Shown here in pieces: positions 13,052 to 63,733 of a DNA stretch of 64,000 nt. The DNA is from Macrostomum lignano. Taxonomy: Eukaryota. The DNA lies in contig NIVC01001587.1 in the NCBI GenBank assembly GCA_002269645.1, positions 186,001-250,000 of the forward strand, written 5' to 3'. A model generated the notes under the pieces. That model ran no database searches. It was not told the DNA's origin and saw only the letters and a list, made by a program, of their open reading frames with translations. The translations under genes were made by a program, and so were the position numbers. Position 1 is the first letter of the stretch. Every line of letters starts with the position of its first letter.

Positions 13052-13107
13052 CCAAGCATGCCCCACATGATAAGTCTAAGCCTATTGTTTCACAAAATTT
13101 TCAGGCA

Positions 13108-13812
13108 ATGGAAGCCCCACCAATCAACAACACTGTGTACATTCGCAATCTCAATGAGAAGATTAAACGAGACGAATTAAAAAAGTCCCTATACGCCATA
13201 TTCTCTCAGTTTGGCCAAATCCTCGACATCATCACTTCGCGTACGATGAAGATGAAGGGCCAGGCTTTTGTGGTGTTCAACGATCAGGCCTCAGCGGCCA
13301 ATGCCGTCCGGTCAATGCAGGGCTTCCCATTCTTTGAGAAGTCAATGATGCTGGCATTCGCTCGGACAGACTCGGACGTCATTGCCAAACGCAAGGGTAC
13401 GTTTGTTGAACGGCCGAAACGGCTGGCCACCGCCACCGTTGCAGCCTCCGGCAAGGACAGCCGGAAGAAGAGAAAAGCCGCCGCTGGCAAAGGCGGCCTG
13501 GCCGCGGCCGCAGCCGCTTTAAAGTCGGAATCGTCGGCCCAGCAGCCAATTGATCCCAGCAGCATTCCGGAGCAGCCGCCCAACCAGATCCTGTTCCTGA
13601 CTAACCTGCCGGCCAGTTCTAATCACGCCATGCTGACTGTGCTGTTCACCCAGTTCGCCGGGTTCAAGGAGGTCCGCATGGTGCCCGGCCGCACCGACAT
13701 CGCATTTGTCGAATTCAACACCGAGGTTGAGAGCACGCACGCCAAGAACTCTTTGAACGGATTCTGCATCGAGCCGGAGTACCCCATGAGAATCACATTC
13801 GCTAAGAAGTAG
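13108..13812 (+). CDS. SNRPA: U1A/SNF-like snRNP protein (two RRMs), intronless
   Basis: RRM1 NNTVYIRNLNEKIKRDELKKSLYAIFSQFGQILDI..KMKGQAFVVF..RSMQGFPFF..DSDVIAKRKGTF; RRM2 PPNQILFLTNLP..GFKEVRMVPGRTDIAFVEF..MRITFAKK. ATG 3 nt after TTTTCAG; AATAAA at 14141. Confidence 0.9.
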   Translation: MEAPPINNTVYIRNLNEKIKRDELKKSLYAIFSQFGQILDIITSRTMKMKGQAFVVFNDQASAANAVRSMQGFPFFEKSMMLAFARTDSDVIAKRKGTFVERPKRLATATVAASGKDSRKKRKAAAGKGGLAAAAAALKSESSAQQPIDPSSIPEQPPNQILFLTNLPASSNHAMLTVLFTQFAGFKEVRMVPGRTDIAFVEFNTEVESTHAKNSLNGFCIEPEYPMRITFAKK

Positions 13813-15310: not shown

Positions 15311-15689
15311 GGTAGAATGAGACACATGAGAAGGCTAAATTGATTATAAACTGTACAATAAGGGATATGGGAAATATCTTCGTCCCGGCGCAGCAAATAG
15401 AAATTGTCAGTGAGGAATAAGTTTAGTAAGTGTCAACTACTCTGTGAGAGAAGGCGAAGCACTTTAAGCTTTCAATAGATTTCCATAACTTTTCAAGTGT
15501 TAAAGTCCTTAGCTAATGATTTAGCAGTGCACAGCGTCGGCTTGAGTTTGGTAAGTCAGTGTCCATCTAGTTCAGTTAGCTAGTAATAGAATCCAATTGC
15601 ATTTGATTATTAGCTGCTTTGGCTTTCACGTACCAACACGTCGCTCACTCCATCCATCCTGAGCAGCGGCTGGCTTATCAACTGTTGCC

Positions 15690-16475: not shown

Positions 16476-16947
16476 GCCTTCCCACACCCCAGTACTGAGC
16501 CTTCCCACACCCCAGTACCGAGCCTTCCCACACCCCAGTACCGAGCCTTCCCACACCCCAGTACTGAGCCTCCCCCACACCCAGTACTGAGCCTTCCCAC
16601 ACCCCAGTACTGAGCCTTCCCACACCCCAGTACCGAGCCTTCCCACACCCCAGTACCGAGCCTTCCCACACCCCAGTACCGAGCCTTCTCCACACCCCAG
16701 TACTGAGCCTTCTCCACACCCCAGTACCGAGCCTTCCCACACCCCAGTACCGAGCCTTCCCACACCCCAGTACTGAGCCTCCCCACACCCAGTACTGAGC
16801 CTTCTCCACACCCCAGTACTGAGCCTTCCCACAACCCATTACAGAGCCTTCCCCACACCCAGTACTGAGCCTTCCCACACCCCAGTGCCAGTACTGAGCC
16901 TTCCCACACCCCAGTGCCAGTACAGAGCCTTCCCCACACCCCAGTAC
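16476..16947. repeat. 23-bp minisatellite CCTTCCCACACCCCAGTACTGAG, just 3' of the U2B''-like stop
   Basis: About 20 copies; the next AATAAA is at 17249. Confidence 0.95.
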
Positions 16948-17584
16948 CGAGGCTGAGCCCGACCGTACATTTACACGTATTAAATACCCATTAATGATTG
17001 GGTTGTTCGTTTTTAATAATAATACTGATTTTCGTGGCAGTGATGGCGTAAACTTTGAACTTTCGCATTTCTTTGTTTGTTTTGCTATTTCTCTCCCTTG
17101 TCGTTTCATCATGTTACTCATAATGCCTTGTAGTCGTCTAATTATAGTAGGCAAGTAGGAAAATTTTCTTAATAAATTGTTTCCTAATATAAAGTCTGTT
17201 AGCTCCTTTCAACGACTTCTGTTCTCTATTGTTACTTGCTTGCTCTTCAATAAAAATAACCATTTGTTTCACTTTATGACATTATTGTTTTGCCCTATGT
17301 TTATTTAACAAGCCAAGCGGAATTAAAAGTGTATTATTAACCTCCTTTTTCAGCAAGCAAAAATTTGGAGCAAAAGAGTTTTCTAAGTAATTGAGGCTTT
17401 ATTCATTTATTTATTTGCTTACAGTTTTGAGTAAAGACACATTCTATTTAGCCTACTTACAAGAGTAGAAAGAAGAACATTTTTTGAAACAATTATATTC
17501 GATTCGTAGCTTACTTAGACTACTGATGACAGTAGACAGTAGAACATTTTAAAATAATTGTATTGGCATAATACCCCGCTGAAG

Positions 17585-20500
17585 CTAACAGTGACCACCC
17601 TGAGCGGCGAAGGCGCCGTTGCTCAAGTGGACGCCTCGCCGGACATGACCGTGTCCGAGCTGTTGGCCGTCTGCCGCGCCGAACTCCGCATGCCGGCTGG
17701 CAACAACATAGTGCTGTTGCACAATGGCCAGCCGTTGAATTCGCCTCAGGCTAAACTAAGCCAGGCTGGCGTCACTGACGGCGATATGATTATTGCTCAG
17801 CCTATGCCTAATCAACAGCAGATGCAGCAGCAACAGCAGAGGCAGCGGCAGCAGCCGGCTCGAGGAGGTGGCGGCGGCGGCGCTGCCGGCGGAATGCCGC
17901 TTATTGATTTTTCAGGCGTTCGGCTTGGCAGCGGAGGGAGCGGCGGCAGGCAGGCGCAGCCGCAGCGCCGGTTTGAGGTCCGGAGCAGTAGGGAGTAGTG
18001 ATCATGAGGATAGGGAATGGTGATCATGAAGATAGGGAATGGTGATCATGAAGATAGGGAATGGTGATCATGAAGATAGGGAATGGTGATCATGAGGATA
18101 GGGAATGGTGATCATGAGGATAGGGAATGGTGATCATGAGGATAGGGAATGGTGATCATGAGGATAGGGAATAGTGATCATGAAGATTAGGGAGCGAGGA
18201 TAAGGGGATTATAAAAGCGCTAGGATAAGGGGATAGAATCGCTAGGATAAGGGGATAGAATCGCTGAGATAAGGGGATAGAATCGCTAGGATAAGGGGAT
18301 AGAATCGCTAGGATAAGGGGATAGAATCGCTGAGATAAGGGGATAGAATCGCTGGGATAAGAGATAGAATCGCTAGGATAAGGGGATAGAATCGCTGGGA
18401 TAAGGGATAGATACGCTAGGATAAGGGGATAGAATCGCTAGGATAAGGGGATAGAATCGCTAGGATAAGGGGAAAGAATCGCTGAGATAAGGGGATAGAA
18501 TCGCTGAGATAAGGGGATAGAATCGCTGAGATAAGGGGATAGAATCGCTAGGATAAGGGGATAGAATCGCTAGGATAAGGGGATAGAATCGCTGAGATAA
18601 GGGGATAGAATCGCTAGGATAAGGGGATAGAATCGCTAGGATAAGGGGATAAAATCGCTGAGATAAGGGGATAGAATCGCTAGGATAAGGGGATAGAATC
18701 GCTGAGATAAGGGATAGAATCGCTAGGATAAGGGGATAGAATCGCTGAGATAAGGGGATAGAATCGCTAGGATAAGGGGATAGAATCGCTAGGATAAGGG
18801 GATAGAATCGCTGGGATAAGGGGATAGAATCGCTGAGATAAGGGATAGAATCGCTAGGATAAGGGGATAGAATCGCTGAGATAAGGGGATAGAATCGCTA
18901 GGATAAGGGGATAGAATCGCTAGGATAAGGGGATAGAATCGCTGGGATAAGGGGATAGAATCGCTGAGATAAGGGGATAGAATCGCTGGGATAAGGGGAT
19001 AGAATCGCTGAGATAAGGGGATAGAATCGCTGGGATAAGAGATAGAATCGCTAGGATAAGGGGATAGAATCGCTGGGATAAGGGATAGACTCGCTAGGAT
19101 AAGGGGATAGAATCGCTGAGATAAGGGATAGAATCGCTAGGATAAGGGGATAGAATCGCTGGGATAAGGGATAGACTCGCTAGGATAAGGGGATAGAATC
19201 GCTGGGATAAGAGATAGAATCGCTAGGATAAGGGGATAGAATCGCTGGGATAAGGGGATAGAATCGCTGGGATAAGAGATAGAATCGCTAGGATAAGGGG
19301 ATAGAATCGCTGGGATAAGGGATAGACTCGCTAGGATAAGGGGATAGAATCGCTGAGATAAGGGGATTAGGGTAATGAGTCATGACAAAGACGCAGCTTG
19401 ATCGCATTGATCATTGACACCCATAAACACCAACTCCAGACTGACGAGGAAGCCTCGGCCGCGGTGGCCTCGAACCCGGAGATCCTTCGCCAAGCCCTGC
19501 TATCGATGCCCGAACAGCTGGCCGCCCTTCGCCAACAGAATCCTCAGCTGGCCGACGCCGTGTCCGACCCGGACAGATTTGCCCAGCTTGTCCGAACGGC
19601 CCAGTCTGAGCGGTCACGCGCCGCCCAAGAGCGAGCCCGCCTGATGGCCGCCAATCCGTACGATCCCCGCGTGCAGCAGGAGATTCAGAGCCTCATACAG
19701 CAGCAGAATATCGATTCCAGCATGGAAACCGCACTGGAGCACATGCCCGAGGCCTTCGCCCCCGTCAATATGCTCTACATTGATGTTAAAGTGAGCTGCT
19801 GCTGGCCACACACTGCGGACTGCTTATTCAATATAGTCAGCCTTTTCTATCCATAATCCACTGAATCTAATTCATAATCTACTGACATCTAATTCATAAT
19901 CCACTTACATCTATTCATAATCCACTGGCATCTAATCCATAATCTACTGACATCTAATTCATAATCTACTGACATCTAATTCATAATCCACTGTTATCTA
20001 ATCCATAATCCACTGTCATCTAATCCATAATCCACTTACATCTATTCATAATCCACTGTCATCTAATCCATAAGCCACTTACATCTATTCATAATCCACT
20101 GGCATCTAATCCATAATCCACTGACATCGGATCCATAATCCACTGACATCTATTCATAATCCACTGGCATCTAATTCATAATCTACTGACATCTATTCAT
20201 AATCCACTGACATCTAATTCATAATCCACTGACATCTAATTCATAATCTACTGACATCTATTCATAATCCACTGGCATCTAATTCATAATCTACTGACAT
20301 CTATTCATAATCCACTGACATCTAATTCATAATCCACTGACATCTAATTCATAATCTACTGACATCTATTCATAATCCACTGGCATCTAATTCATAATCT
20401 ACTGACATCTATTCATAATCCACTGACATCTAATTCATAATCTACTGACATCTAATTCATAATCCACTGTCATCTAATTCATAATATCCTGACATCTAAT

Positions 20501-23117
20501 TATAATCCACTGTCATCTAATTCATAATCCACTGTCATCTAATCCATAATCCACTTAAATCTATTCATAATCCACTGACATCGGATCCATAATCCACTGA
20601 CATCTATTCATAATCCACTGGCATCTAATTCATAATCTACTGACATCTATTCATAATCCACTGACATCTAATTATAATCCACTGGCATCTAATTCATAAT
20701 CTACTGACATCTAATTCATAATCCACTGGCATCTAATTCATAATCTACTGACATCTAATTCATAATCCACTGGCATCTAATTCATAATCTACTGACATCT
20801 ATTCATAATCCACTGACATCTAATTCATAATCTACTGACATCTAATTCATAATCCACTGTCATCTAATTCATAATCTACTGACATCTAATTCATAATCCA
20901 CTGGCATCTAATTCATAATCTACTGACATCTATTCATAATCCACTGACATCTAATTATAATCCACTGGCATCTAATTCATAATCTACTGACATCTAATTC
21001 ATAATCCACTGGCATCTAATTCATAATCTACTGACATCTAATTCATAATCCACTGGCATCTAATTCATAATCTACTGACATCTATTCATAATCCACTGAC
21101 ATCTAATTCATAATCTACTGACATCTAATTCATAATCCACTGTCATCTAATTCATAATCTACTGACATCTAATTCATAATCCACTTACATCTAATTATAA
21201 TCCACTGGCACCTAATTCATAATCTACTGACATCTATTCATAATCTACTGACATCTATTCATAATCTACTGACATCTAATTATAATCCACTGACATCTAA
21301 TCCATAATCTACTGACATCTAATTATAATCCACTGACATCTAATCCATAATCCACTGACATCTAATTTATAATCCACTGACATCTAATCCATAATCCACT
21401 GACATCAGATCCATAATCCACTGACATCTACTAATCGTTTAAAGATATCAAAGTCGTCAGAAGATGACCGAGAGGCATCTATAAATCAAGATACTGGTAC
21501 AATTTTTACATTAATCGCAATATTCGTGTAACTTTGGCAAACCCGCCCAGGTGAATGGCCATCCGGTGAAGGCATTCGTAGACAGCGGCGCCCAGATGAC
21601 AATCATGTCGCTGCCCTGCGCCCAGCGCTGCAACGTTGAGCGCCTGATTGACAAGCGCTGGGCGGGCATCGCCAGAGGCGTCGGCACTCAGACCATTGTG
21701 GGCAGAATTCACCTCGGCCAGCTCCAGATAGGCGGCGACTATCTCGCTTGCAACTTTAGCGTGCTGCGAGACCAGAGCATGGACCTGCTGCTGGGCCTTG
21801 ACATGCTCAAGAGGCACCAGTGCCTGCTGGACCTCAAGGTTTGTTTGTTTCTTGCTTTTATCCCCGTGCTTCCCCTCTATCAGATCCCCATGCTTCCCCT
21901 CTATCAGATCCCCCTGCTTCCCCTCTATCAGATCCCCATGCTTCCCCTCTATCAGATCCCCATGCTTCCCCTCTATCAGATCCCCATGCTTCCCCTCTAT
22001 CAGATCCCCGTGCTTCCCCTCTATCAGATCCCCATGCTTCCCCTCTATCAGATCCCCATGCTTCCCCTCTATCAGATCCCCATGCTTCCCCTCTATCAGA
22101 TCCCCGTGCTTCCCCTCTATCAGATCCCCATGCTTCCCCTCTATCAGATCCCCATGCTTCCCCTCTATCAGATCCCCATGCTTCCCCTCTATCAGATCCC
22201 CCTGCTTCCCCTCTATCAGATCCCCATGCTTCCCCTCTATCAGATCCCCGTGCTTCCCCTCTATCAGATCCCCATGCTTCCCCTCTATCAGATCCCCATG
22301 CTTCCCCTCTATCAGATCCCCGTGCTTCCCCTCTATCAGATCCCCATGCTTCCCCTCTATCAGATCCCCGTGCTTCCCCTCTATCAGATCCCCATGCTTC
22401 CCCTCTATCAGATCCCCATGCTTCGCCTCTATCAGATCCCCGTGCTTCCCCTCTATCAGATCCCTCTGCTTCCCCTCTATCAGATCCCCATGCTTCCCCT
22501 GTATCGGATCCCCATGCTTCCTCTATCCCCTATCCCAGATCCCAATTATCTTATATCCCCAATCTTCTCAGATCCCTAATCCTGTCAGATCCCCAATTCT
22601 CTCAGATCCCCAATCCTGTCAGATCCCCAATTCTGTCAGATCCCCAATCCTGTCAGATCCCATTCCTGTCAGATCCCCAATCCTCCCAGATCCCCATCCT
22701 CATAGATCCCCAATCCTCCCAGATCCCCAATCCTGTCAGATCCCCAATCCTGTCAGATCCCCAATCCTGTCAGATCCCCAATCCTCCCAGATCCCCAATC
22801 CTCCCAGACCCCCAACCCTCTGACCAGCCCCGCCCCGCCGCCCGCAGTCGAACAAGCTGGTGATCGGCACTACAGGCACAGTCGCCCCGTTTCTATCCGA
22901 GGCCGACCTGCCCGAGGACGCCCGGGCCAGCGGCGGCGGCAGCGGCGGCGAGGGCGGCAAGCCGATCACCCAGGAGTCTATCGACGCCGTCGTAGCCGGA
23001 GGTCCCGACGGTACAACAGCCGACGATGCTCGAGAAGCGCTGATGCACGCTCTAGGCGAGGTGGACGCCGCTATAGCCTTTCTGGTTGCTAAGCAGAGCG
23101 AGAGGTCCGGGCAGTGA
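17585..23117 (+). CDS. DDI1: DNA damage-inducible protein 1 (UBL - helical/STI-like - retroviral-type aspartic protease - UBA); start codon unresolved
   Basis: Exons ~17585-17977, 19440-19790, 21551-21838 and 22848-23117, all phase 0. UBL ([25 protein letters not shown]), [36 protein letters not shown], catalytic [33 protein letters not shown]-terminal UBA-like ([19 protein letters not shown]). Confidence 0.93.
18000..19367. repeat. Compound 22-bp arrays in Ddi1 intron 1 (GATCATGAAGATAGGGAATGGT, then GGATAAGGGGATAGAATCGCTA)
   Basis: Two adjacent arrays at 18000-18185 and 18198-19367. Confidence 0.95.
19852..21431. repeat. 21/22-bp minisatellite ATAATCCACTGACATCTAATTC, Ddi1 intron 2
   Basis: About 72 units. 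Confidence 0.95.
21860..22810. repeat. 24-bp minisatellite CCCCTCTATCAGATCCCCATGCTT grading into 17-bp CAGATCCCCAATCCTGT, Ddi1 intron 3
   Basis: Direct inspection. Confidence 0.95.
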
Positions 23118-23607
23118 AACAATTCTGTCCCAATCCTCACGCCGCAGGTGGGAAGACTCCGGGGAAACTGACACACTCGCTAGGGCCGAATTTCCCCTTA
23201 ATCAGTTTGACAATTATATATCTGTATATTCCGAGAGCAAACTATCCTATTGCTAATGTAAATTATTGGTTGCTCAAAAAAATTGTTACAAACAGATCAG
23301 TTTGCTGCTTATTTAATTACAATAGCTGCTTTCTAATTGCTGTTTACTCAAGCGCTTGTTGAAAACCTGCCCCCGGTTTAGCATACTATTCCTTTCCTCC
23401 GTTTGTCTCTGTTTTTTGTGTTTTTTCTAATTCTTTTTTAATTGTACCCTAGCAACACTGCGCTGGACCCTCCATTGCTAGCTGTGCGCTTATTAACGAT
23501 AATAATAAACGCAATAGGAGCGTTAAATATGGTACATATAAGTTGCCTTTTTTCATTTGCCGGATTATTGTCTTCTTAGGATCTGATTGTGGCTTCTGAA
23601 ATCACTC

Positions 23608-24200
23608 AATTCACTTATAAACTCATGAACTCGCTCATAATTCACTTATAAACTCCACGAACTCGCTCATAATTCACTTATAAACCCACGAACTCGCTCA
23701 TAATTCAATTATAAACTCATGAACTCGCTCATAATTCACTTATAAACTCATGAACTCGCTCATAATTCACTTATAAACTCATGAACTCGCTCATAATTCA
23801 CTTATAAACTCATGAACTCGCTCATAATTCACTTATAAACTCACGAACTCGCTCATAATTCATTTATAAACTCACGAACTCGCTCATAATTCATTTATAA
23901 ACTCATGAACTCGCTCATAATTCACTTATAAACTCATGAACTCGCTCATAATTCATTTATAAACTCACGAACTCACTCATAATTCACTTATAAACTCACG
24001 AACTCACTCATAATTCACTTATAAACTCATGAACTCGCTCATAATTCACTTATAAACTCATGAACTCACTCATAATTCACTTATAAACTCATGAACTCGC
24101 TCATAATTCACTTATAAACACACGAACTCGCTCATAATTCACTTATAAACTCATGAACTCACTCATAATTCATTTATAAACTTATAAATTCATAAACTCA
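23608..24200. repeat. 31-bp minisatellite ATAAACTCATGAACTCGCTCATAATTCACTT between Ddi1 and SNX3
   Basis: About 18 copies. Confidence 0.95.
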
Positions 24201-24372
24201 CTAATCGTCTTTTGGGAATTTTCTAAATTGCATGCAAAACCTGTTTTAATCAGTAAATTGAAAATTTTTAAACACAAAGACATTGTTGTAGATTTTTGCA
24301 ACAAGATTCGATAAATTAAAGTGACTATCCTGTCAGCACTACTAGCCAATCGAGCAGAGCAGCAGTAGTATA

Positions 24373-25836
24373 ATGAGCACATCGACACAGAGCGCCGCTT
24401 CAATCCAGCGACTGCAGCACAAGCGCCAGACGCTCGAGGACGCGTATTCGCCGCCCGCTAATTTTTTAGAAATCGACGTCTGCAATCCGGAGACGCACGG
24501 AGTTAACAAGGACCGCTACACGGACTATGAGGTCCGGATGCGCACTAACCTGCCCGTGTTCCGGCTCAAGGAGTCCTCGGTGCGTCGGCGCTACTCGGAG
24601 TTCGAGTGGCTTCGAGGCGAATTAGAGCGCGACTCGAAAATTGTGGTGCCGAAACTTCCAGGTGAGATTGGCTGTCACAGTTAACAGCATTGATTGGTCC
24701 TTGTCGGGAGTCAAAATCGCTTTTTATCTACCCCGAGACCCTTTGATCTTAGCCGCCAGCTAATTAGCATCACTTTGATCTCAGCCGCCACCTAATTAGC
24801 ATCACTTTGATCTCAGCCGCCACCTAATTAGCATCACTTTGATCTCAGCCGCCACCTAATTAGCATCACTTTGATCTCAGCCGCCACCCAATTAGCATCA
24901 CTTTGATCTCAGCCGCCACCTAATTAGCATCACTTTGATCTCAGCCGCCACCTAATTAGCATCACTTTGATCTCAGCCGCCACCCAATTAGCATCACTTT
25001 GATCTCAGCCGCCAACTAATTAGCATCACTTTGATCTCAGCCGCCACCTAATTAGCATCACTTTGATCTCAGCCGCCACCTAATTAGCATCACTTTGATC
25101 TCAGCCGCCACCCAATTAGCATCACTTTGATCTCAGCCGCCACCTAATTAGCATCACTTTGATCTCAGCCGCCACCTAATTAGCATCACTTTGATCTCAG
25201 CCGCCACCCAATTAGCATCACTTTGATCTCAGCCGCCAACTAATTAGCATCACTTTGATCTCAGCCGCCAGCTAATTAGTATCACTTTGATCTCAGCCGC
25301 CAGCTAATTAGCATCACTTTGATCTCAGCCGCCAACTAATTAGTATCACTTTGATCTCAGCCGCCAGCTAATTAGCATCACTTTGATCTCAGCCGCCAAC
25401 TAATTAGCATCACTTTGATCTCAGCCGCCAACTAATTAGCATCACTTTGATCTCAGCCGCCAGCTAATTAGTATCACTTTGATCTCAGCCGCCAGCTAAT
25501 TAGCATCACTTTGATCTCAGCCGCCAACTAATTAGCATCACTTTGATCTCAGCCGCCAGCTACATGTAATTAGCATTACTTTGATCTTAGCCGCCACCTA
25601 ATTAGCATCACTTTGATCCCGCAGGCAAGGCTCTCCGGCTTCAGCTGCCGTTTCGCGGCGGAGGCGACGGCCGCTTCGATGACGAATTGATCGAAGAGAG
25701 ACGCCGCGGCCTCGAGGACTTCATCAACAAGGTGGCCGGGCACCCCCTGGCCCAGAATGAGAAGTGCCTGCACATGTTCCTACAGGAGCAGACTGTTGAC
25801 AGGGGCTACGTGCCCGGCAAAGTGCGAACCACTTGA
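24373..25836 (+). CDS. SNX3: Sorting nexin-3/12 (PX domain)
   Basis: Exons 24373-24661 and 25625-25836 (phase 1). QTLEDAYSPPANFLEIDV, RYTDYEVRMRTNLPVF, VRRRYSEFEWLRGELERDSKIVVPKLPGKA, IEERRRGLEDFINKVAGHPLAQNEKCLHMFLQE. Confidence 0.96.
24741..25618. repeat. 32-bp minisatellite TTTGATCTCAGCCGCCACCTAATTAGCATCAC, SNX3 intron
   Basis: About 27 copies running up to the true acceptor. Confidence 0.95.
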
Positions 25837-42162: not shown

Positions 42163-42312
42163 ACTATTGATCCGATTTAGATGTTTTAGGAGCCCTCCCC
42201 GAAGGGGGCGCAAATGACTAGTCCACATATACTAAGCAAAGCGTATGCAAAGCGTAGCACACAGTCACCTTCTCTGCTTCAATTGCATTGCAGGCAACAG
42301 TAAGTGCAGCAA

Positions 42313-45300
42313 ATGTCGTTGCTGCTGCCGCTCCTGGCGGGACTGTTCCTGACGCCGAGCCTCACAGTTCTCACCTCGGCCGTACTGCTGCAAGAGACAC
42401 TAAGCTTCGATGAGAAACAGCCGCCCAGCACTCTGGTTGGCAGCCTGCGCCCGCCATTGAGGCGCTACCTCACCGACTCCGAATTGGCAAACGTCTCCCT
42501 GACGCGCCTGTCTGCCAACCAGCCGGGTGCGAGCCTCTTCGACATCCGGCAAGATGGCGGAGTGTATACCGGCCGTCTGACGCTCGATCGAGACCGGCTG
42601 TGCAACACGGACGGCCTCTGCTGCGAACCCGACATGCGACAGCTGGGCGACCTGGCCGTGTGCGAGTTCAAGCAGCTGGTGGTGGCTACGCACAGCGCTG
42701 GCTCACCGGTTACTCTGGAGCTGACTCTACAGCTCAGAGATCTCAACGACCATTCGCCGGCATTCTCTGCCGATAAGTACGTAGTGCACTTCCGCGAAAC
42801 TGACCAGATAGATCAACTGGTGCTGCTCCCGTTGGCTATTGACGCTGACTGGGGTAGAAACGGCATCGTGAGCTACCGGCTGCGAGAGCCAAGCGACTTC
42901 TTCAAGCTGCAGGAGGTGCGAAAAGGCGACAAGATCACCGAGCTGCGGCTGCTGAACCGGCAGCCGCTAGACCGCGAGTCCAGCGCGTGGCACAGCCTGC
43001 ACCTAGTGGCCGAGGACGGCGGCAGGAAGTCCGGTGCCACATTAATCAATGTCACGATTGATGATGTCAACGATTGCAGCCCGGAGTTTGTTAACGGTAG
43101 CCAGGTGTCTGTCGACGTGCCCGAAGACAAGCGCGAACGCTCCGTGGTGGCCAGCGTTCTGGCTACGGACAAGGACGAAGGACAGAACGGCCGGGTGAGC
43201 TACAGGCTGCGCCAGGGCCAGTCGGGGCAGCCCTCGGCGCTGCTTTTCGGAGTCGACGCCCACACCGGTCGCATTTGGCTCTACCGGCCACTCACCTTCT
43301 GGCCCCAGCGGCCGGCGAGCAACTGGCACGACCTCACCGTGGTGGCGTTCGACCACGGCTCGCCAAGTCGGTCAGCCGAGATCACCGTCCGCATTCGCGT
43401 GCTGGACGTCAACAACCACGCGCCAAGCATCAACGTGCAGAGCCTCCTTGCCGGGCCGGCGGGAGCCGCTGCCTCGACTGATCCGGTTGTCCACGTGCTG
43501 GAGAATCAGCAGTATGGTGCTCAGCGACCCATAGCTTCGTTACACTCGCAAGATCAGGACGACGCTGAGAATGGCCGAGTCCGGTGCGACCTGAAGTCGG
43601 GCGCGGACATGTTCGGCCTGCAGCTCATCAGCCAGATGAAAACTGGCGACTGCATCTACCATCTACTGGCGCTGCAGACCTTTGACAGAGAAGCCGTGGC
43701 GCGTCACACTGTCACGGTGCGGTGCTCCGACCAGGGGCAGCCGGCGCAGCACAGCGAGTTAGTCATCCGTGTTGAGGTCGATGACGTGAATGATTCGCCG
43801 CCGGTGTGGCCGAGCTCCGCCCCGATTTCGCTAGCCGTTCTGGAGAATCAGCCGACCGGGGCGCCGCTCGGCTTCGCCCGCGCCGAAGACGCCGACGTTG
43901 GGCCGAACGCGGTCATCGAGTACCGCCTGGAGCCGCCGGAGATCCTGGCGGACCTGGCCATCGACACTGCGAGCGGCCAGCTGACCACCGCTCGGTCCTT
44001 CGATCGAGAGTCGCAGGCCAGCCTGTCGTTCCGCGTCGTGGCGGTCAATCCAGCTCCGCCTGGGTTCTCTGCCACCGCGGAGGCGAGCCTCCGGATTCTG
44101 GACGAGAACGACAACCAGCCGATTGTGACTGAGGACACGCCCGGGACGGTCACAGTGTTGGAGGGCGCCCCGGTCGGCACGGTGGTCACCCGGATCAACG
44201 CTACGGACGCAGACGAAGGTCCGCAACGTTTTCGATTCACAATCAAGAGTGGCGGCGGCGGGAAATTTGTCGTCCGCAACAACGGCGAGATCGCACTGTC
44301 GGGCCAGCTGGACCGGGAGCTCACCGCTGAGCACCAGCTGCTCATTGGGGTGGCCGACTCTGGCGTGCCCAGCCAGCGGACCGAGTTCCGTCTCACCGTG
44401 CTGGTCGGGGATATCAACGACTCGCCGCCGAGGTTTGTCTTCCCGCCGGCTGAGAGGCCCGGCCCGCCACATCAGGTGAGAGGCAGCTGGGCGATAGTAG
44501 TGGTGGGGAAGCTGACTTCATGACAGTTTCATTCAGAAAAAATTTTACGATGTCACGATGATGTCCCGACTATAATTCTGTCAAATGCTGTCACGATGCT
44601 TCCAGGAAACTTTTGTACAAGCATTTTTGTACCGCTCCACCCCAACCTGCGCAGGTGAACATCTCAATCAACCAGATTCCCGGCAATCCAGTCGCCACCA
44701 TCATCGCACACGACGACGACACGGGACAGAACGGCAACGTCACCTACCGGCTGCTGCGGTCGGTTTCCGGCAGCGCGCCGGCGCCTGCCTCTTCGTCGGG
44801 TTCAGCTGCCGGCGCCGAGACACCGACTGACTTCGCCGACTATTTCAACCTGGAGCCGCTGACCGGCAGGCTGCTTCTGCGGCGACGCCTCCAAGGCGTC
44901 CCCGCTGCCGACGGCTGCCTCGGCGGCGGGTCCGGCCGCCTGCTGCGGTTGGAAGCGTCTGACCAAGGACAGCCGTCTCTGAAGCGGGTGACTCAGCTAC
45001 GAATCTGCGCCGTCAACGACGTCAGCGACGGAGGCGGAGGTGCCGGCGGTGGCAACGGCAGCCCGCCATCGTCGTCCGGGCAGGACGGGCGCACCTGGCC
45101 TGGCGCCGGCGGCAGCGGCGGAAACGGCGAAGTTTTTAACGGCGGCGATTTGTCTAGCGCAATCGTGCTGCTGACTGCCGGCCTGGCCATTCTCGTGCTG
45201 CTGGCGCTCATTCTGTCTGTGGTGTTCCTCATTGTGAGGCGGCGGGCCGAGGGATTCTCTGCTGCCGGCGGCGGCGCGTCTGCCGGAGTGGGGCGGGGTG

Positions 45301-48300
45301 AGTGAGAATAGGGTGGGGAGAGTGAGAATAGGGTGGGGTGAGTGAGAATAGGGTGGGATGAGTGAGAATAGGGTGGGGTGAGTGAGAATAGGGTGGGGTG
45401 AGTGAGAATAGGGTGAGGTGAGTGAGAATAGGGTGGGGTGAGTGAGAATAGGGTGAGGTGAGTGAGAATAGGGTGGGATGAGTGAGAATAGGGTAGGGTG
45501 AGTGAGAATAGGGTGGGGTGAGTGAGAATAGGGTGGGATGAGTGAGAATAGGGTGGGGTGAGTGAGAATAGGGTGGGGTGAGTGAGAAAAGGGTGGGGTG
45601 AGTGAGAATAGGGTGGGATGAGTGAGAATAGGGTAGGGTGAGTGAGAATAGGGTGGGGTGAGTGAGAATAGGGTGGGGTGAGTGAGAAAAGGGTAGGGTG
45701 AGTGAGAATAGGGTGGGGTGAGTGAGAATAGGGTGGGGTGAGTGAGAATAGGGTGGGGTGAGTGAGAATAGGGTGGGGTGAGTGAGAATAGGGTGGGGTG
45801 AGTGAGAATAGGGTGGGGTGAGTGAGAATAGGGTGGGGTGAGTGAGAATAGGGTGGGGTGAGTGAGAATAGGGTGGGATGAGTGAGAATAGGGTGGGGTG
45901 AGTGAGAATAGGGTGAGGTGAGTGAGAATAGGGTGGGGTGAGTGAGAATAGGGTGGGGTGAGTGAGAATAGGGTGGGGTGAGTGAGAATAGGGTGGGTGA
46001 GTGAGAATAGGGTGGGGTGAGTGAGAACAGGGTGGGGTGAGTGAGAATAGGGTGGGGTGAGTGAGAAGAGGAGGGGGGTAAGTGAGGCTGGGACTCAGGG
46101 TAAGTGAGGCAGGGATTAAGGGTGAGTGAGGCTGGGATTAAGGGTGAGTGAGGCTGGGATTAAGGGTGAGTGAGGCTGGGATTAAGGGTGAGTGAGGCTG
46201 GTATTAAGGGTGAGTGAGGCTGGGATTAAGGGTGAGTGAGGCTGGGATTAAGGGTGAGTGAGGCTGGGATTAAGGGTGAGTGAGGCTGGGATTAAGGGTG
46301 AGTGAGGCTGGGATTAAGGGTGAGTGAGGCAGGGATTAAGGGTGAGTGAGGCAGGGATTAAGGGTGAGTGAGGCTGGGATTAAGGGTGAGTGAGGCTGGG
46401 ATTAAGGGTGAGTGAGGCAGGGATTAAGGGTGAGTGAGGCTGGGATTAAGGGTGAGTGAGGCTGGGATTAAGGGTGAGTGAGGCTGGGATTAAGGGTGAG
46501 TGAGGCTGGGATTAAGGGTGAGTGAGGCAGGGATTAAGGGAGAGTGAGGCAGGGATTAAGGGAGAGTGAGGCTGGGATTAAGGGTGGGTGAGGCAGGAAC
46601 TCAGGGTGAGTGAGGCTGGGATTAAGGGTGAGTGAGGCTGGAATTAAAGCTGAGTGAGGCTGGGATTAAGGGTGAGTGAGGCTGGAACTCAGGGTGAGTG
46701 AGGCTAGGATGAGGCACACTGAAGCGGTTAGGCTGAAGACTGCCTGGGTTATGACGCAACGCGGGCCACTCCAAGGCCAAGAATGAAGTGTGCATTCAGC
46801 TTAGCATAGAGTGGGGGCTTTTACGTGCCAAAAGAAATAAAAAAGGATCCATCAAGTAAAACGATGCGGACAGGAGCCGGGGGGGGGGGCTGAGCAGAGC
46901 AGGCAGATAATGAAGGCGCGGAGGACTCAACGGGAACTCAAAGGACTGAAATCGGAAATGTTTGCCAAGAGGCCTGGAATGGAGACTACCCCAACCGGCC
47001 CAGCTGGGCTCGGGGCGTGAAACTCTCGGCAGTCATCATGTCGGAATGCCGAGTCCAGCGCCCGCGATCGGAAGAAGCTCGCGATTTTCGAGGCCCCTCT
47101 CAAGTGGACCGCCTGAGCTGGGTGGGATTTTGGCACCGCGGGGAGCAGATTAGGGAGTGTTGAGGTGATTGAGAATGGCCTGGTTAGGCTCCCCGGACTG
47201 TCAGTTTAGTTAGTTGAACGAACAAGGGAAGACACAACTTCCTGTTCGTGGGGGGGGGGGGGTTCGGCCGATTGAAGTTCAACTAGACTCACGTTTGGGA
47301 GCAAGCTTTTTTATCCGATTTTTGTAACTCGCTAACTGGGGCTTTAGGGGCGCTAGCAGGGGCGCTAGCAGGGGCGCTAGCAGGAACAATGAGAGGGGCG
47401 CTAGCAGGGGCGCTAGCAGGGACAATGAGAGGGGCGCTAGCAGGGGCGCTAGCAGGAACAATGAGAGGGGCGCTAGCAGGGGCGCTAGCAGGAACAATGA
47501 GAGGGGCGCTAGCAGGGGCGCTAGCAGGAACAATGAGAGGGGCGCTAGCAGGGGCGCTAGCAGGGACAATGAGAGGGGCGCTAGCAGGGGCGCTAGCAGG
47601 AACAATGAGAGGGGCGCTAGCAGGGGCGCTAGCAGGGACAATGAGAGGGGCGCTAGCAGGGGCGCTAGCAGGGGCGCTAGCAGGAACAATGAGAGGGGCG
47701 CTAGCAGGGGCGCTAGCAGAGACAATGAGAGGGGCGCTAGCAGGGACAATGAGGAGGGCGCTAGCAGGGACAATGAGAGGGGCGCTAGCAGGGGCGCTGA
47801 GAGGGGCGCTAAGAACATGAGCTTCAGTAGAGGCACTGATTGAAATGAAAAATCAGCGATCAAACCGAGATTCCACAGCAGCGTCCTCCGAAAAAAAGGA
47901 TTCAAAGTTGTGCCTTGACATGCGTGCCTCGATTCCCTCGTTTCGCTTCTCTTATTGTTCTCATTTATCGCTGGATCTAGTCCCATACTCGTATCATCAG
48001 TAGTCTGATTTTTCATAGCTTCTCTCTGAGTGAAAGCCTGGGTGAAATCGCATTTCTCAATCCAAGTAAATCTGTCTGATCAGTGCAGTCCAGGTTACCC
48101 TTGCGTGCGCAATATCATCTTACTTGCTGGGCCTTTTCCCTCAGCCCCCTCTCTCTCCCGTATTATCCTGTTGCGCAAGATGCCAATACTGATAGGGGAT
48201 CAGCAGCGGCAGATCCATGGGAATAGCTTTGCCTTTGTCTCGCGGAGGCAGATGAGGAAGGCGTGTGTAGCTGTTAACTCAATCAGCCAGTTGAAATGCC

Positions 48301-51801: not shown

Positions 51802-54800
51802 TCAGGGTGGTCCGCCGGTCCGTCCTGCAGCGTGATCTTCCGTTGGGAAGAAACTGGCTCGTCTAGTCGCCCGAAGGAACTGGATGAGCCGTGGGATGCT
51901 GTCGGGCTGGCAAACCTCGTCAATGGACGGGTTCGGCCCGAGGTAGCGTAGCCGGTCTCTGTTAAAGAAAGGGCAGTGACAGACAAAGTGCTGAGCATCT
52001 TCATTGTCGCACTCGCAAAAGGGGCAAATTTCGCTCTCGAGGTCGCCTCGGAGGAAGCAGTGCCTGGCGAGGTAGCCATGGCCGGTAAGGGTCATGACAA
52101 GGGCTCGAATATCCTTCCGATTCTGGTTCAGAAGGATGTTTCTGAGCCTGTGAGACGGGCAAGGAACCGCGGCACGAGATTGCCGGCAGTTTTGGGTGCC
52201 CGCCCATCTGTCCCTGTGGAGGGAGTCAGCCCAGTCGTCGATCTGACGATTGATGACTGTCAAGGGCATAGGGACCAGGGGGGCAGGGCCGAAAAAAGAG
52301 CCAGAGCCGCCCCTCTTGGCGAGGGTGTCTGCCAGCTCGTTCCCCGGAAACCCTGCGTGCCCTGGGATCCACTTCAGCCTGACAGTATTGCTTCTGGCCA
52401 GGAGGTTGAGCTGCCGGGCGCAGTCGGCGACTGTCCGGGAGTTCGTTGTGGTGTGGCAAAGGGCCTGTAAGGCCGCTTGGCTGTCGGAGTGGATGACAAT
52501 AGTCTTTCCTCTCGTAACCTTGGCGTTTAGCTCTGCAGCGCAAGAGCTGATGGCAAGGACTTCGTTCTGGAAGACTGTGGAGAGTCTACCAGTGTGCTGG
52601 GCATGCGTGGCAATTACGCGGCCGTTGATGATGATGCAGACCCCAAAGCCGGCGCGACCGTCTTTGATGGATCCGTCCGTGTAGCAATGGACCTCCTGGA
52701 AATTCCAGTGGTCATTGGCAGCATCCCTAGAGGGGATGGTGACCTTGTAGCGCTGAAAGAGGTTGAGAGTGCGGGGTTCGCCGTCAGATAGGACGTGGAG
52801 CCCGCCGCTGTCTCTCAAGTCCTTGAGGCAGAGGTCAGCGTGGGGCAGAAGCTTGCGCTTAGCCATGGCCCTATGGGGCTGGATTCGAATGCCAGCGTCA
52901 GCTAGACGGCGGGCAGTCTTAGCCGCTTCCCTGCGGACAAAGATGTCCAGCGGAGGAATGTTGAGGAAGGCGTTGAGGCCATCGTAAGGAGCAGACGGAG
53001 GGGCGCTCATGATCGTGCGACAAGCGCGCCCTTGCGCTCTCCTGAGAGCCTCTAGACAGGTCTTTATCTGCAGGGCGCTAGCCCAGATCAGGCCGCCATA
53101 CGAGATAGCGGGCCTAACCATTGCAGTGTAGATCCACCAGAGGCGCTTGGGGGTGAGCCCCCAGGTGGTGCCGACGGCCCTGCGCAATTGCGCGAGGACT
53201 GCGAAGGCCTTTTTGGCTTTTGTTTGAACGTGGGGAGACCAGTTCAGCCTGTGGTCCAGGGTAATACCCAGACATTTAGTCTGCTTGCAGAAGGGGATTT
53301 CCCTTCCGTAAAGCGTGAGCGGCCGAATCTGCCACTTGGTCCTGCTGGTGAACATGATCGCTGCGGTCTTAGTCTCAGAGAGCCTTAAACCACAGCGGTC
53401 CGCCCATTGCTCAGCAGCGTAGATGAAGTTCTGAAGAAGGTCCCTGAGGGTATCAGGGGACGGACCAGATGCCACCGCGGTGACATCGTCCGCATATCCA
53501 ACTTTCAGAATGGGGTCAGGCCGAACATCCCGGAGGAGCTCATCGATGACCATATTCCAGAGAACTGGAGACAGCACCCCACCTTGCGGGCTACCTTTGC
53601 AGACGGGGACCGTCCTCTGGTAGCCCAGCAGACTGGCGGTGGCCGTGCGATGGCTGATCATGTACATGATCCATCTGGTGAGATGTGAGTGCGTTAGCCT
53701 CTCACAAAGAGCTCTTCGGAACGCCTCAAAGAGGACGTTATCGAAGGCGCCAATGATGTCCAGGAAGATCCCCAGAGCAAAGCCACTACCAAGCACGGCC
53801 TTCTCGAGTTTATCGACCAGGACGTGCAGCGCGCTTTCAGTGGAGCGACCCGCCCGAAAAGCGTGCTGGTTCTCGCTGAGAGGTTTGTTCTTCAGCTCAA
53901 CAGAGAGAAGGCGCCAAAGCACCAGTCTCTCCATCAGCTTGACCAGGGAGGAGGTCAAGCTGATCGGTCTGAAGGATTTGATAGAATGGTAGTCCGGGCG
54001 GCCTGGCTTAGGGATAAAGATCACCTTTGCCTCGGTCCATGCCTGCGGGACATAACCAAGCGTGATGCATGCCCGAAGAAGGCTGCAAAGTTTGCGCAGG
54101 AAGCCTGGGCATTTAACCGCCTCTCTTAGAAGGGCCGGTACAATGCCGTCGGGTCCTGGGGCTTTGAAAGGCTTGAAGGAATTTGCCGCTCTCACAATGC
54201 GGTCCTCCGTGATGATAGATGCAGCCAGCGCGTGACCTCCCTCCGAGTGATCCGGAGTGGTCTGGTTAGCTGGCTCGTTAGGGAAAAACGCAGTGAGCAT
54301 TACATCAAGCGTTTCCCCTGGGTTGTCCGTGGACGTACCGTCGGTGCGTTTGACCGAGGAGAGCTTAGACATTTTGTCCAGCGTGAGCGCTTTCACAACT
54401 CTGGAGGTGGGGCGTGAGCCCTCTAGCTCCTCACAGTATTGTCGCCATTTTTGAGCCTTTGCATTCCTAACCTGCCTTTTAAACTCATGAATTGCTTCAT
54501 GATAGGCGGTTTGGTCTGCAGGGCTCTTAGTTTTAGTTGCTCTGCGGTGGAGTCTCTTAGCCCTGCGACGGAGGTTGCCGAGCTCGGGATTCCACCACGG
54601 CGCCGATTTTTTCCCTTTATAGGCTTTTAAAGGGCAGGACGCCTCAAAGGCGGCGGTTAGCGTCTCTGTCAAAACAGTCGCGCACTCATCCGCCTCTCGG
54701 CACGACGTGATCGTGAATGGTTGGCCAGGAGACCGATGGAATTCCTTCAGGGCGAGCCCGAAGGTTTCCCAATCAGTATTTCTGGCGTTCCGTCTCCACA

Positions 54801-55506: not shown

Positions 55507-55508
55507 TA

Positions 55509-63660: not shown

Positions 63661-63733
63661 CCCCCCCCGATTATTAGCTCATTAATCGAAGAATCCGTAC
63701 ATTAACGTACAATACTCTTCAGAGTCTCCAACC

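What the first reader, a model, noticed from the sequence alone, without database searches (positions are those of the whole stretch)
17520..17650. Ddi1 has no ATG before its UBL domain; the initiator may be donated by a spliced-leader AUG (or be a CUG)
Seen: an in-frame TAA at 17555-57 is followed by ...CCG CTG AAG CTA ACA GTG ACC ACC CTG. UBL strand 1 (KLTVTTL) is intact but preceded by CTG where ATG is expected, and the first in-frame ATG (17645) lies inside the UBL. An AG at 17583-84 falls exactly on a codon boundary. Established: flatworm spliced leaders end in AUG, which can act as the initiator Met. Inference: SL-AUG + CTA ACA GTG gives M-L-T-V-T-T-L, similar to the MLxTV start of animal DDI proteins. 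Alternatives are CUG initiation, or a tiny upstream exon ATG ACA (17526-31) with a weak 53-nt intron.
Basis: partly seen in the sequence, partly recalled or inferred. Interest (0 to 1): 0.78.

Follow-up and report, generated by a model that had tools for sequence, protein, structure and literature searches.

The report
Spliced-leader AUG starts flatworm Ddi1
The flatworm Macrostomum lignano's Ddi1 gene has no start codon of its own because the trans-spliced leader supplies the AUG, a known flatworm mechanism, and the odd "CTG" in its place is most likely an error left by polishing the genome assembly with RNA-seq reads.

Summary
The window is Macrostomum lignano contig NIVC01001587.1 (assembly Mlig_3_7). 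The gene is the DDI1/DDI2 orthologue Mlig028733.g1.

**Observation.** It holds as written. TAA lies at 17555-57, CTG at 17579-81 sits exactly where homologues have Met1, and the first in-frame ATG (17645) is inside the UBL.

**Spliced-leader (SL) AUG: supported.**
- The 35-nt M. lignano SL ends in ATG.
- A full-length transcript from a related flatworm (83% identical protein) begins with the last 16 nt of that SL joined directly to AAG. This gives SL-AUG-KLTVTTL.
- Codons 2-22 differ from that relative at 9 synonymous and 2 non-synonymous codons, so they are translated.

**The CTG is probably not genomic.**
- Mlig_3_7 was polished with Pilon using RNA-seq reads.
- At the neighbouring SNX3 trans-splice site, one paralogous contig has TTCAG|. 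This window and a third contig have GCATG|, the last five SL bases.
- At Ddi1 the same codon reads CTG, CTG and ATG in three contigs, and Q (CAG/CAA) in a model from the older ML2 assembly. This is a stepwise shift towards the SL's ATG.
- The true site is probably CAG|AAG, with the junction at 17581|17582 rather than 17584|17585.

CUG initiation and the micro-exon are not supported. This is a known mechanism in a new gene. The useful by-product is the assembly caveat.

The parts
17555..17557 (+). In-frame TAA that closes the reading frame upstream of the UBL. It lies in the outron.
   Evidence: Identical in L002 and L003.
17558..17581 (+). Last 24 nt of the outron, ttgtattggcataataCCCCGCTG. 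It contains no AG. The final triplet 17579-81 reads CTG in this assembly and is inferred to be the CAG 3' splice site.
   Evidence: The older-assembly model A0A1I8IBX4 has Q at this codon. The g2 annotated 5' end follows it directly.
17580..17580 (+). T that is suspected not to be genomic. It equals the penultimate base of the spliced leader (...CATG). True base inferred to be A.
   Evidence: Pilon polishing with RNA-seq; SL tail GCATG overwriting TTCAG at the SNX3 acceptor in this same contig. L003 has SL-like A and T at -3 and -2.
17582..17977 (+). Ddi1 exon 1 as trans-spliced, starting with codon 2 (AAG, Lys). It encodes the UBL domain and the Gln/Gly-rich linker. Donor is GAG|GTCCGG.
   Evidence: SL|AAG junction in L004.
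17582..17584 (+). AAG, a possible alternative in-frame acceptor. The exon would start at 17585 and SL-AUG would give MLTVTTL. With the inferred CAG it forms a CAGAAG tandem acceptor.
   Evidence: The g3 model PAA59167.1 starts LTVTTL at the equivalent base.
17589..17591 (+). CAG, a possible alternative acceptor. The exon would start at 17592, giving SL-AUG followed at once by UGA, which is out of frame.
   Evidence: The NCBI model of this very copy (PAA66131.1) starts at G17591, VTTLSG.
17645..17647 (+). First genomic in-frame ATG (codon 23), inside the UBL. Not the normal start.
   Evidence: Codons 2-22 show 9 synonymous and 2 non-synonymous codon differences from L004.
19440..19790 (+). Ddi1 exon 2 (HDD helical domain).
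21551..21838 (+). Ddi1 exon 3 (retropepsin-like protease, DSGAQ active site).
22848..23117 (+). Ddi1 exon 4, ending in the TGA stop.
24230..24234 (+). SNX3 trans-splice acceptor. It reads GCATG (the last 5 nt of the SL) here and in L003, but TTCAG in L002. This is the control that reveals the polishing artefact.
15670..15672 (+). CTG that ends at the annotated 5' end of the upstream U1A/U2B''-like gene in all three contigs. A possible second acceptor with an SL-derived T at -2.
   Evidence: This is an inference. The annotation does not state that this 5' end was defined by SL reads.

Best explanation
The gene is the Macrostomum lignano DDI1/DDI2 orthologue, with UBL, HDD and retropepsin-like protease domains. 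It lies in a same-strand, operon-like array: U1A-like, then Ddi1, then SNX3.

**Mechanism.**
- The pre-mRNA is trans-spliced to the 35-nt spliced leader (SL), CGGTCTCTTACTGCGAAGACTCAATTTATTGCATG.
- The 3' splice site occupies the position where other animals have the Met1 codon.
- The SL's terminal AUG is the only AUG in the leader, and so the first from the cap. It is joined directly to codon 2 (AAG, 17582) and serves as initiator, giving [12 protein letters not shown]...
- The gene therefore neither needs nor has a genomic ATG.

**The CTG.** The CTG at 17579-81 is most likely CAG in the animal. The assembly was polished with RNA-seq reads. Reads that carry the last bases of the SL wrote SL bases over the end of the outron: T at -2 here and in L002, and A and T at -3 and -2 in L003.

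**Shown:**
- the SL sequence
- the SL-to-codon-2 junction in a relative's transcript
- purifying selection on codons 2-22
- overwriting of the SNX3 acceptor by SL bases in this same contig

**Inferred:**
- that base 17580 is really A
- that the same junction is the main one used by this copy
- that translation starts at the SL AUG
For: **The locus**
1. The organism and locus are identified by a 100% protein match to PAA66131.1 on NIVC01001587.1.
2. The M. lignano SL ends in ATG. The trans-acceptor consensus is [T/C]TNCAG (PMC8629364). The SL is highly conserved in the genus, and its final ATG has been noted as a likely start codon (PMC10468722).

**Transcript evidence**
3. Logan RNA contig L004 (SRR30276804) encodes a Ddi1 that is 83% identical. 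It begins CTCAATTTATTGCATG|AAGCTCACCGTAACCACCCTG, which is the last 16 nt of the SL fused to codon 2.

**Selection on the coding sequence**
4. Codons 2-22 differ from L004 at 9 synonymous and 2 non-synonymous codons. The two CTG copies differ from each other at 7 synonymous and 1 non-synonymous codons. By my rough binomial, each has P of about 1e-4 to 4e-4 under neutrality. The N-terminal strand is therefore translated and the copies are under purifying selection.

**Annotated 5' ends**
5. Gene boundaries in Mlig_3_7 were cut at peaks of SL-containing reads by the TBONE pipeline. The g2 model starts at AAG. ML2-based models start K, K and QK.

**The artefact**
6. Mlig_3_7 was polished with Pilon using Illumina DNA and STAR-mapped RNA-seq.
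7. At the SNX3 acceptor, L002 reads aaattTTCAG|CAAAACC. The window and L003 read aaattGCATG|CAAAACC. These are four adjacent changes to exactly the SL tail, within otherwise identical flanks.
8. At Ddi1 the states are CAG (inferred from Q in ML2 model A0A1I8IBX4), CTG (window and L002) and ATG (L003). The SNX3 half of A0A1I8IBX4 is identical to the protein on the L002 contig. These states are the series expected from overwriting -2 and then -3 with SL bases.

**Operon context**
9. The spacers to the neighbouring genes are under 1 kb after tandem repeats are subtracted. A Ddi1-SNX3 read-through model exists.
Against: - I found no M. lignano transcript or genomic read for this locus, so base 17580 and the junction used by this copy are not directly observed. 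Searches for M. lignano transcripts in the protein collections found none.
- The NCBI model of this very copy starts at 17591, which points to the out-of-frame CAG acceptor at 17589-91. The g3 model points to AAG at 17582-84. Three junctions are therefore annotated and their relative use is unknown.
- Two contigs share the same CTG. That is also what a real variant would look like.
- Overwriting only one or two bases here, against four at SNX3, requires different RNA-to-DNA read ratios. I cannot check those.
- The Q in the ML2 model is known only from a protein record.
- L004 has an in-frame TAG at codon 89. It could be an assembly error or a defective allele in that species.
Confidence: 0.7

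Rival explanations
1. The CTG is a real variant that destroyed the ancestral CAG acceptor in this copy and in L002. Trans-splicing then shifts 3 nt downstream to AAG (17582-84). SL-AUG joined to CTA gives MLTVTTL, one residue shorter.
For: - Two independent contigs carry CTG.
- The AG at 17583-84 is in frame.
- The g3 model starts at the equivalent CTA.
- The CTG copies are under purifying selection, at 7 synonymous to 1 non-synonymous, so some productive start must exist.
Against: - The variable bases change to exactly the SL's own -2 and -3 bases.
- SL-tail overwriting is demonstrated 6.6 kb away in the same contig.
- The g2 model starts at AAG directly after its CTG, which cannot be a 3' splice site.
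- The ML2 model of the g2 haplotype has Q there.
Confidence: 0.15
2. This copy is trans-spliced mainly at CAG 17589-91. The SL AUG is then followed at once by UGA. The protein would start at Met23 by reinitiation with a broken UBL, or would not be made at all. Either way the isoform or copy is unproductive or decaying.
For: - The NCBI model of this copy starts at G17591.
- CAG is the preferred acceptor core.
- M. lignano carries several redundant copies.
Against: - Codons 2-22 are under strong purifying selection between species, at 9 synonymous to 2 non-synonymous. The copies are at 7 to 1 between themselves.
- An upstream CAG (the inferred true sequence) or the AAG would be met first by the spliceosome.
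- The relative uses the codon-2 junction.
Confidence: 0.06
3. Translation starts at the CUG codon itself (non-AUG initiation) on an mRNA that keeps the upstream sequence.
For: The CUG sits exactly at the Met1 position. CUG is the most efficient near-cognate start codon (general knowledge).
Against: - Every annotated 5' end lies downstream of the C at 17579.
- The context is poor, with C at -3 and A at +4.
- An upstream out-of-frame ATG at 17526 opens a short ORF.
- The codon is ATG in L003 and Q in ML2, so it is not conserved.
- The relative's mRNA has the SL there.
Confidence: 0.02
4. A tiny cis-spliced upstream exon (ATG ACA, 17526-31) with a 53-nt intron supplies the Met, giving MTLTVTTL.
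For: The ATG exists. GT follows ACA, and the AG at 17583-84 is in frame.
Against: - The donor GTAGAC does not fit the species consensus GT[G/A]AG.
- No public model has an MT N-terminus.
- The homologues start directly at the UBL.
- The relative's transcript has the SL, not an upstream exon.
Confidence: 0.02

Closest known systems
Flatworm mRNAs that use the spliced leader's 3'-terminal AUG as initiator Met (Cheng, Cohen, Ndegwa and Davis 2006, J Biol Chem 281:733, as cited in PMC9851317 and PMC12582326). Called slORFs in slORFfinder.
   Same: The SL ends in AUG. The acceptor sits at the first codon of a conserved ORF, the SL AUG is in frame, and no genomic AUG precedes the conserved N-terminus.
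   Different: That work was on Schistosoma mansoni, where more than 40 cDNAs need the SL AUG. Here the organism is a free-living macrostomid and the gene is Ddi1. Translation from the SL AUG is inferred, not measured.
DDI1/DDI2 (Ddi1/Rngo) ubiquitin-like retropepsin shuttle proteins
   Same: - The UBL, HDD (PF24669) and Asp_protease (PF09668) architecture is present, with a DSGAQ active site.
- Identity to mollusc, brachiopod and vertebrate DDI2 is 42-48%.
   Different: - It has a long Gln/Gly-rich linker.
- The C-terminal UBA is not detected by Pfam.
- The start codon is supplied in trans.
M. lignano operons resolved by SL trans-splicing (Ustyantsev and Berezikov 2021, PMC8629364)
   Same: The neighbours are on the same strand, with repeat-adjusted spacers under 1 kb. 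The downstream genes are trans-spliced, and a read-through precursor is seen as a fused gene model.
   Different: Operon membership here is inferred from spacing and from one fused model. It was not checked against the published operon list.
Errors introduced when an assembly is polished with reads that do not come from the genome
   Same: Pilon was run with RNA-seq alignments. Bases from the SL, which is not encoded at the locus, appear at the last outron positions.
   Different: I found no paper describing this for Mlig_3_7 or for trans-spliced organisms in a limited search. It is shown here at one site and suspected at about four others.

Membership tests
SL-AUG-initiated flatworm mRNAs | The species' spliced leader ends in AUG | tested here: met
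   The M. lignano SL is CGG...TTGCATG (PMC8629364). There is no other ATG within the SL (read directly from the sequence).
SL-AUG-initiated flatworm mRNAs | The mRNA of this gene carries the SL at its 5' end | tested here: inconclusive
   Met for the orthologue in a related flatworm (L004). For this locus the evidence is only indirect: annotated 5' ends produced by an SL-read-based pipeline. No M. lignano reads were available.
SL-AUG-initiated flatworm mRNAs | The SL AUG is in frame with the conserved ORF, with no stop between | tested here: met
   - Junction 17581|17582 gives M-KLTVTTL.
- Junction 17584|17585 gives M-LTVTTL.
- Junction 17591|17592 gives AUG-UGA and is out of frame.

SL-AUG-initiated flatworm mRNAs | No genomic in-frame AUG can encode the conserved N-terminus | tested here: met
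   TAA is at 17555-57, and there is no ATG before 17645 (codon 23, inside the UBL). Codons 2-22 are under purifying selection. L003's ATG is probably an artefact.
SL-AUG-initiated flatworm mRNAs | The protein is made from the SL AUG | not testable with these tools
   This needs N-terminal proteomics, ribosome profiling or a reporter assay.
DDI1/DDI2 | N-terminal ubiquitin-like domain | tested here: met
   Pfam Rad60-SLD covers residues 2-71 with E = 2e-6. The domain aligns with DDI UBLs.
DDI1/DDI2 | HDD helical domain followed by a retropepsin-like protease with a D-[ST]-G active site | tested here: met
   PF24669 has E = 2e-16 and PF09668 has E = 1.2e-47. FVDSGAQ is present.
DDI1/DDI2 | C-terminal UBA domain (present in some members only) | tested here: inconclusive
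   There is no Pfam UBA hit. The C-terminal helices resemble the UBA of homologues by eye only.
Non-AUG (CUG) initiated ORFs | The CUG is present in the mature mRNA, in a favourable context, and conserved | tested here: not met
   - All annotated 5' ends lie downstream of 17579.
- The context is C at -3 and A at +4.
- The codon is ATG in L003 and Q in ML2, and the relative has the SL there.
M. lignano operon genes | Same-strand neighbour within 1 kb after subtracting repeats, and a trans-spliced downstream gene | tested here: met
   - The U1A-like stop at 16424 to position 17582 is 1157 nt, of which 440 nt is tandem repeat.
- The Ddi1 stop at 23117 to position 24235 is 1117 nt, of which 575 nt is tandem repeat.

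.

The most novel reading that the evidence does not exclude
The three states at the Met1 position are real alleles of recently duplicated copies: CAG in the ML2 model, CTG in this window and L002, and ATG in L003. One gene would then be caught switching between a start codon donated in trans by the spliced leader and a start codon encoded in the genome, passing through an acceptor-dead CTG intermediate that is rescued by the in-frame AAG acceptor 3 nt downstream.
Probability: 0.1. Interest if true: 0.6.

Novelty: new member of a known kind. Interest (0 to 1): 0.3.

Why it matters
**For the biology.** This is a clean, well-conserved example of a housekeeping gene in a free-living flatworm whose start codon exists only after trans-splicing.
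- It explains why every public model of this gene is flagged "partial".
- It gives the true N-terminus as MKLTVTTL.
- The mechanism itself has been known since 2006, so a specialist would not be surprised.

**For users of the genome.** The more useful result is the caveat. Mlig_3_7 appears to carry spliced-leader bases written over trans-splice acceptors. This can have several effects:
- It can create false ATG codons, as in L003.
- It can destroy AG acceptors in silico, as at SNX3 in this window.
- It can depress motif counts at trans-splice sites. The published top motif was found at only 44% of sites, and this may be part of the reason, which is my speculation.
- It can mislead start-codon and splice-site analyses, primer design and transgene promoter design at the 5' ends of trans-spliced genes.

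Tried and rejected
**Searches that led nowhere**
- I looked for M. lignano Ddi1 transcripts carrying the SL in the protein collections. An 83-residue N-terminal query returned nothing, apparently because the word index is too sparse for short queries.
- A two-sequence N-terminal profile returned only the known M. lignano models and L004.
- The exhaustive representative search added one more ML2 model that starts with K.
- No Logan contigs from M. lignano itself turned up.
- The supplements of PMC5816591 do not list Mlig028733.
- There is no SL RNA gene or SL 16-mer in the window, no Rfam hit, and no tRNA in the three loci. The tRNA-like string upstream in L002 is therefore not a tRNA gene.

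**An analysis that did not work**
- I tried a blind scan for runs of adjacent substitutions between paralogous contigs. Minisatellite misalignment swamped it.
- After masking repeats it returned few runs, and it did not list the SNX3 site itself. That site is documented by the anchor comparison and the direct alignment instead.

**Readings I dropped**
- I first read the CTG/ATG difference as a real start-codon loss or regain between paralogues. I dropped this once the polishing method and the SNX3 control were in hand.
- The "partial" flags alone are not proof of an SL-AUG start. The U1A-like gene is also flagged partial, yet it has its own ATG six codons in.
Full report
**What the window is.**
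- The four coding blocks at 17579-17977, 19440-19790, 21551-21838 and 22848-23117 join in frame into a 435-codon ORF.
- Pfam finds a ubiquitin-like domain, the Ddi2 HDD domain and the DDI-type aspartyl protease in it.
- The protein is 100% identical to PAA66131.1, [quoted passage not shown]. It is 42-48% identical to DDI1/DDI2 of many animals.
- The encoding contig is NIVC01001587.1 of assembly GCA_002269645.1 (Mlig_3_7). Window position equals locus L001 position plus 7590.
- The + strand neighbours are two U1A/U2B''-like RRM genes upstream and sorting nexin 3 (SNX3) downstream.

**The observation.**
TAA lies at 17555-57, then LYWHNTP, then CTG (17579-81), AAG, CTA, ACA, GTG.
- The first in-frame ATG is at 17645. 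An AG ends a codon at 17583-84, and ATG ACA is at 17526-31.
- In an alignment with DDI proteins of other phyla, the CTG codon falls exactly on Met1 of the conserved M-x-[LVI]-T-[VIL]-T-T-L start. Codon 23 lies well inside the UBL.
- The cluster of this protein holds five other M. lignano Ddi1 models, and the representative search found one more. None starts with Met. They start [17 protein letters not shown] (three models) and QKLTVTTL.

**The spliced leader (SL).**
- The M. lignano SL is CGGTCTCTTACTGCGAAGACTCAATTTATTGCATG. About 30% of genes are trans-spliced, and the top acceptor motif is [T/C]TNCAG (PMC8629364).
- The SL is highly conserved in M. cliftonense and M. hystrix. Those authors note that its final ATG is a likely translation start (PMC10468722).
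- All reported flatworm SLs end in AUG. In Schistosoma mansoni more than 40 cDNAs need that AUG to start translation in the right frame (Cheng et al. 2006, as cited). The mechanism is therefore established.

**Direct transcript evidence from a relative.**
- The only other close homologue in the collections is P0002, 83% identical. It is encoded on a 1459-nt contig assembled from RNA-seq run SRR30276804.
- That contig is a full-length mRNA. It begins CTCAATTTATTGCATG|AAGCTCACCGTAACCACCCTGACC.
- The first 16 nt are the last 16 nt of the M. lignano SL. They are followed at once by codon 2, so the mRNA reads SL-AUG-K-L-T-V-T-T-L.
- The SL donor is fixed after ATG, so the genome of that species must have an AG directly before AAG.

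**The N-terminal codons are translated.**
- Between M. lignano and this relative, codons 2-22 differ at 9 synonymous and 2 conservative non-synonymous codons. These are the codons between the Met1 position and the first genomic ATG.
- By my rough binomial, taking about a quarter of random changes as synonymous, this has P of about 1e-4 under neutrality.
- The two copies that carry CTG differ at 7 synonymous and 1 non-synonymous codons over 435 codons.
- Initiation at Met23 therefore cannot be the normal mode, and these copies are not decaying pseudogenes.

**Paralogous contigs.**
- Two further contigs carry the same gene order.
- At the Met1 position the window and L002 read CCCCGCTGAAG, and L003 reads CCCCGATGAAG.
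- A model from the older ML2 assembly (UniRef A0A1I8IBX4) starts Q-K-L-T-V, so that codon is CAG or CAA. Its fused SNX3 half is identical to the SNX3 of the L002 contig.
- The annotated 5' ends fall at AAG in g2, at CTA in g3, and at G17591 in g1, which is this window.
- The annotation pipeline cut gene boundaries at peaks of SL-containing reads.
- If the first base of each model is taken as the G that the SL and every acceptor share, the implied acceptor triplets are CTG, AAG and CAG.
- The same reading gives GAG for a DHHC gene at 63725, and CTG for the U1A-like gene at 15670-72.

**Why the CTG is probably not genomic.**
- I first took CTG versus ATG to be a real start-codon difference between copies. 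The methods of the assembly paper changed that.
- An RNA-seq read that starts inside the last bases of the SL is forced to align across the acceptor. It places ...CATG over ...NCAG, so -2 becomes T and -3 becomes A.
- The states seen at Ddi1 are exactly that series: CAG, then CTG, then ATG.

**An independent control in the same window.**
- At the SNX3 trans-splice site, L002 reads ttctaaattTTCAG|CAAAACCTG, a textbook acceptor.
- The window (24230-34) and L003 read ttctaaattGCATG|CAAAACCTG.
- These are four adjacent substitutions that reproduce the last five SL bases and abolish the AG, within flanks that are otherwise identical.
- The copies differ at only 0.3-0.5% of unique positions. Natural mutation is therefore not a credible source.
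- An 11-nt SL tail, TTTATTGCATG, also sits at 58663-73. About 0.03 such matches would be expected by chance, by my estimate.

**Best explanation.**
- The true sequence is most likely ...ATACCCCGCAG|AAGCTAACAG.
- The SL is spliced to 17582, and its AUG starts the protein as MKLTVTTL.
- The gene has no ATG of its own because the acceptor occupies that codon.
- The inferred CAG and the AAG behind it form a CAGAAG tandem acceptor, and a second CAG lies 7 nt further on. These could account for the annotated 5' ends at 17585 (in frame, MLTVTTL) and 17592 (AUG-UGA, out of frame).
- I cannot tell how much each junction is used.

**Context.**
- The spacers from the U1A-like stop to Ddi1 and from the Ddi1 stop to SNX3 are 1157 and 1117 nt. 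Tandem repeats make up 440 and 575 nt of these.
- After subtracting repeats both are under the 1-kb operon threshold used for this species.
- The ML2 fusion model joins Ddi1 to SNX3, as expected for a polycistronic precursor.

**Rivals.**
- A real CTG allele rescued by the AAG acceptor remains possible.
- CUG initiation fails on three counts. The codon lies upstream of all annotated 5' ends, its context is poor, and it is not conserved.
- The ATG ACA micro-exon has a poor donor and no transcript or model support.
- A Met23 start is contradicted by the substitution pattern.

**Limits.**
- I had no M. lignano reads, neither RNA nor DNA. Base 17580 and the junction usage of this copy are therefore inferred.
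- The ML2 state is known only through a protein record.
- The species behind SRR30276804 is unknown, and its contig has an in-frame TAG at codon 89.

**Verdict.**
- The SL-AUG interpretation is supported, with the junction moved one codon upstream.
- The CTG is probably an assembly artefact.
- This is a known mechanism in a new gene. Interest is modest, and the practical warning about this assembly is the most useful outcome.

Noticed in passing
window 24230-24234; L002 18294-18298; L003 17746-17750: The SNX3 trans-splice acceptor reads GCATG (the SL's last 5 nt) in this window and in L003, but TTCAG in L002. In the window the acceptor AG is absent as assembled. This points to SL bases written into Mlig_3_7 by RNA-seq-based Pilon polishing.
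   Followed up: yes
window 58663-58673 (+); L005 7049-7059: An 11-nt exact match to the SL tail (TTTATTGCATG) is followed by AACGAACG. It is present in both paralogous contigs, and no annotated gene starts there. It may be another overwritten acceptor, possibly a 5' UTR exon of the ZNF593-like gene 2.8 kb downstream, or an unannotated transcript.
   Followed up: partly
window 15670-15672; L002 and L003 equivalents: The annotated 5'-partial CDS of the upstream U1A/U2B''-like gene (250 aa) starts at the G of cggCTG in all three contigs. This may be the same A-to-T overwriting at -2. The gene has its own ATG six codons further in.
   Followed up: partly
L003 12051-12058 (equivalent to window 19783-19790): Paralogue g3 has GTT changed to GGT (V249G). 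This creates a strong cryptic donor, GAT G|GTAAAG, 5 nt before the native one. The NCBI g3 model (PAA59167.1, 275 aa) uses it and runs out of frame.
   Followed up: partly
window 23088-23095 to 24355-24373: UniRef A0A1I8IBX4 is a Ddi1-SNX3 fusion model (...AIAFL|SSSSIMSTSTQ). A donor inside the last Ddi1 exon is joined to an acceptor, gagcAG|AGC, 18 nt before the SNX3 ATG. It is evidence of a read-through precursor. An SL AUG spliced at that acceptor would also be in frame with SNX3.
   Followed up: partly
window 16476-16915, 17989-19367, 19852-21430, 21860-22821, 23608-24182, 24741-25618: Each intron and intergenic spacer in this cluster is filled by its own minisatellite. Periods are 17-32 nt, copy numbers 9-73, and matches 86-96%. 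Array lengths differ between paralogous contigs.
   Followed up: no
window 63712-63727 (DHHC gene) and 13100-13110 (U1A-like, 234 aa): Two more genes have acceptors a few codons upstream of their own ATG, and an SL AUG there would be in frame (cagAG|TCT CCA ACC ATG and TTTTCAG|GCA ATG). In-frame SL AUGs may be common in this species.
   Followed up: no
L004 278-280: The related flatworm's Ddi1 transcript has an in-frame TAG at codon 89, in the poly-Gln/Gly linker. The gene caller split it into two ORFs. It could be an assembly error or a defective allele.
   Followed up: no
window 23590-23591; L001 23980-23981: There are CA/TG dinucleotide differences between paralogous contigs. At 23590, L002 reads gattgCAGcttc, which looks like an acceptor, against gattgTGGcttc here. 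They do not match the SL in register and remain unexplained.
   Followed up: no
window 51802-56462 (-), 42304-45305 (+), 61471-61932 (+): Other content of the window:
- a LINE-like retrotransposon (ORF1, and ORF2 with endonuclease, reverse transcriptase and RNase H)
- protocadherin exons
- a ZNF593-like zinc-finger gene. Its exact protein is annotated on the L002 contig, but was not found annotated on this one.
   Followed up: no
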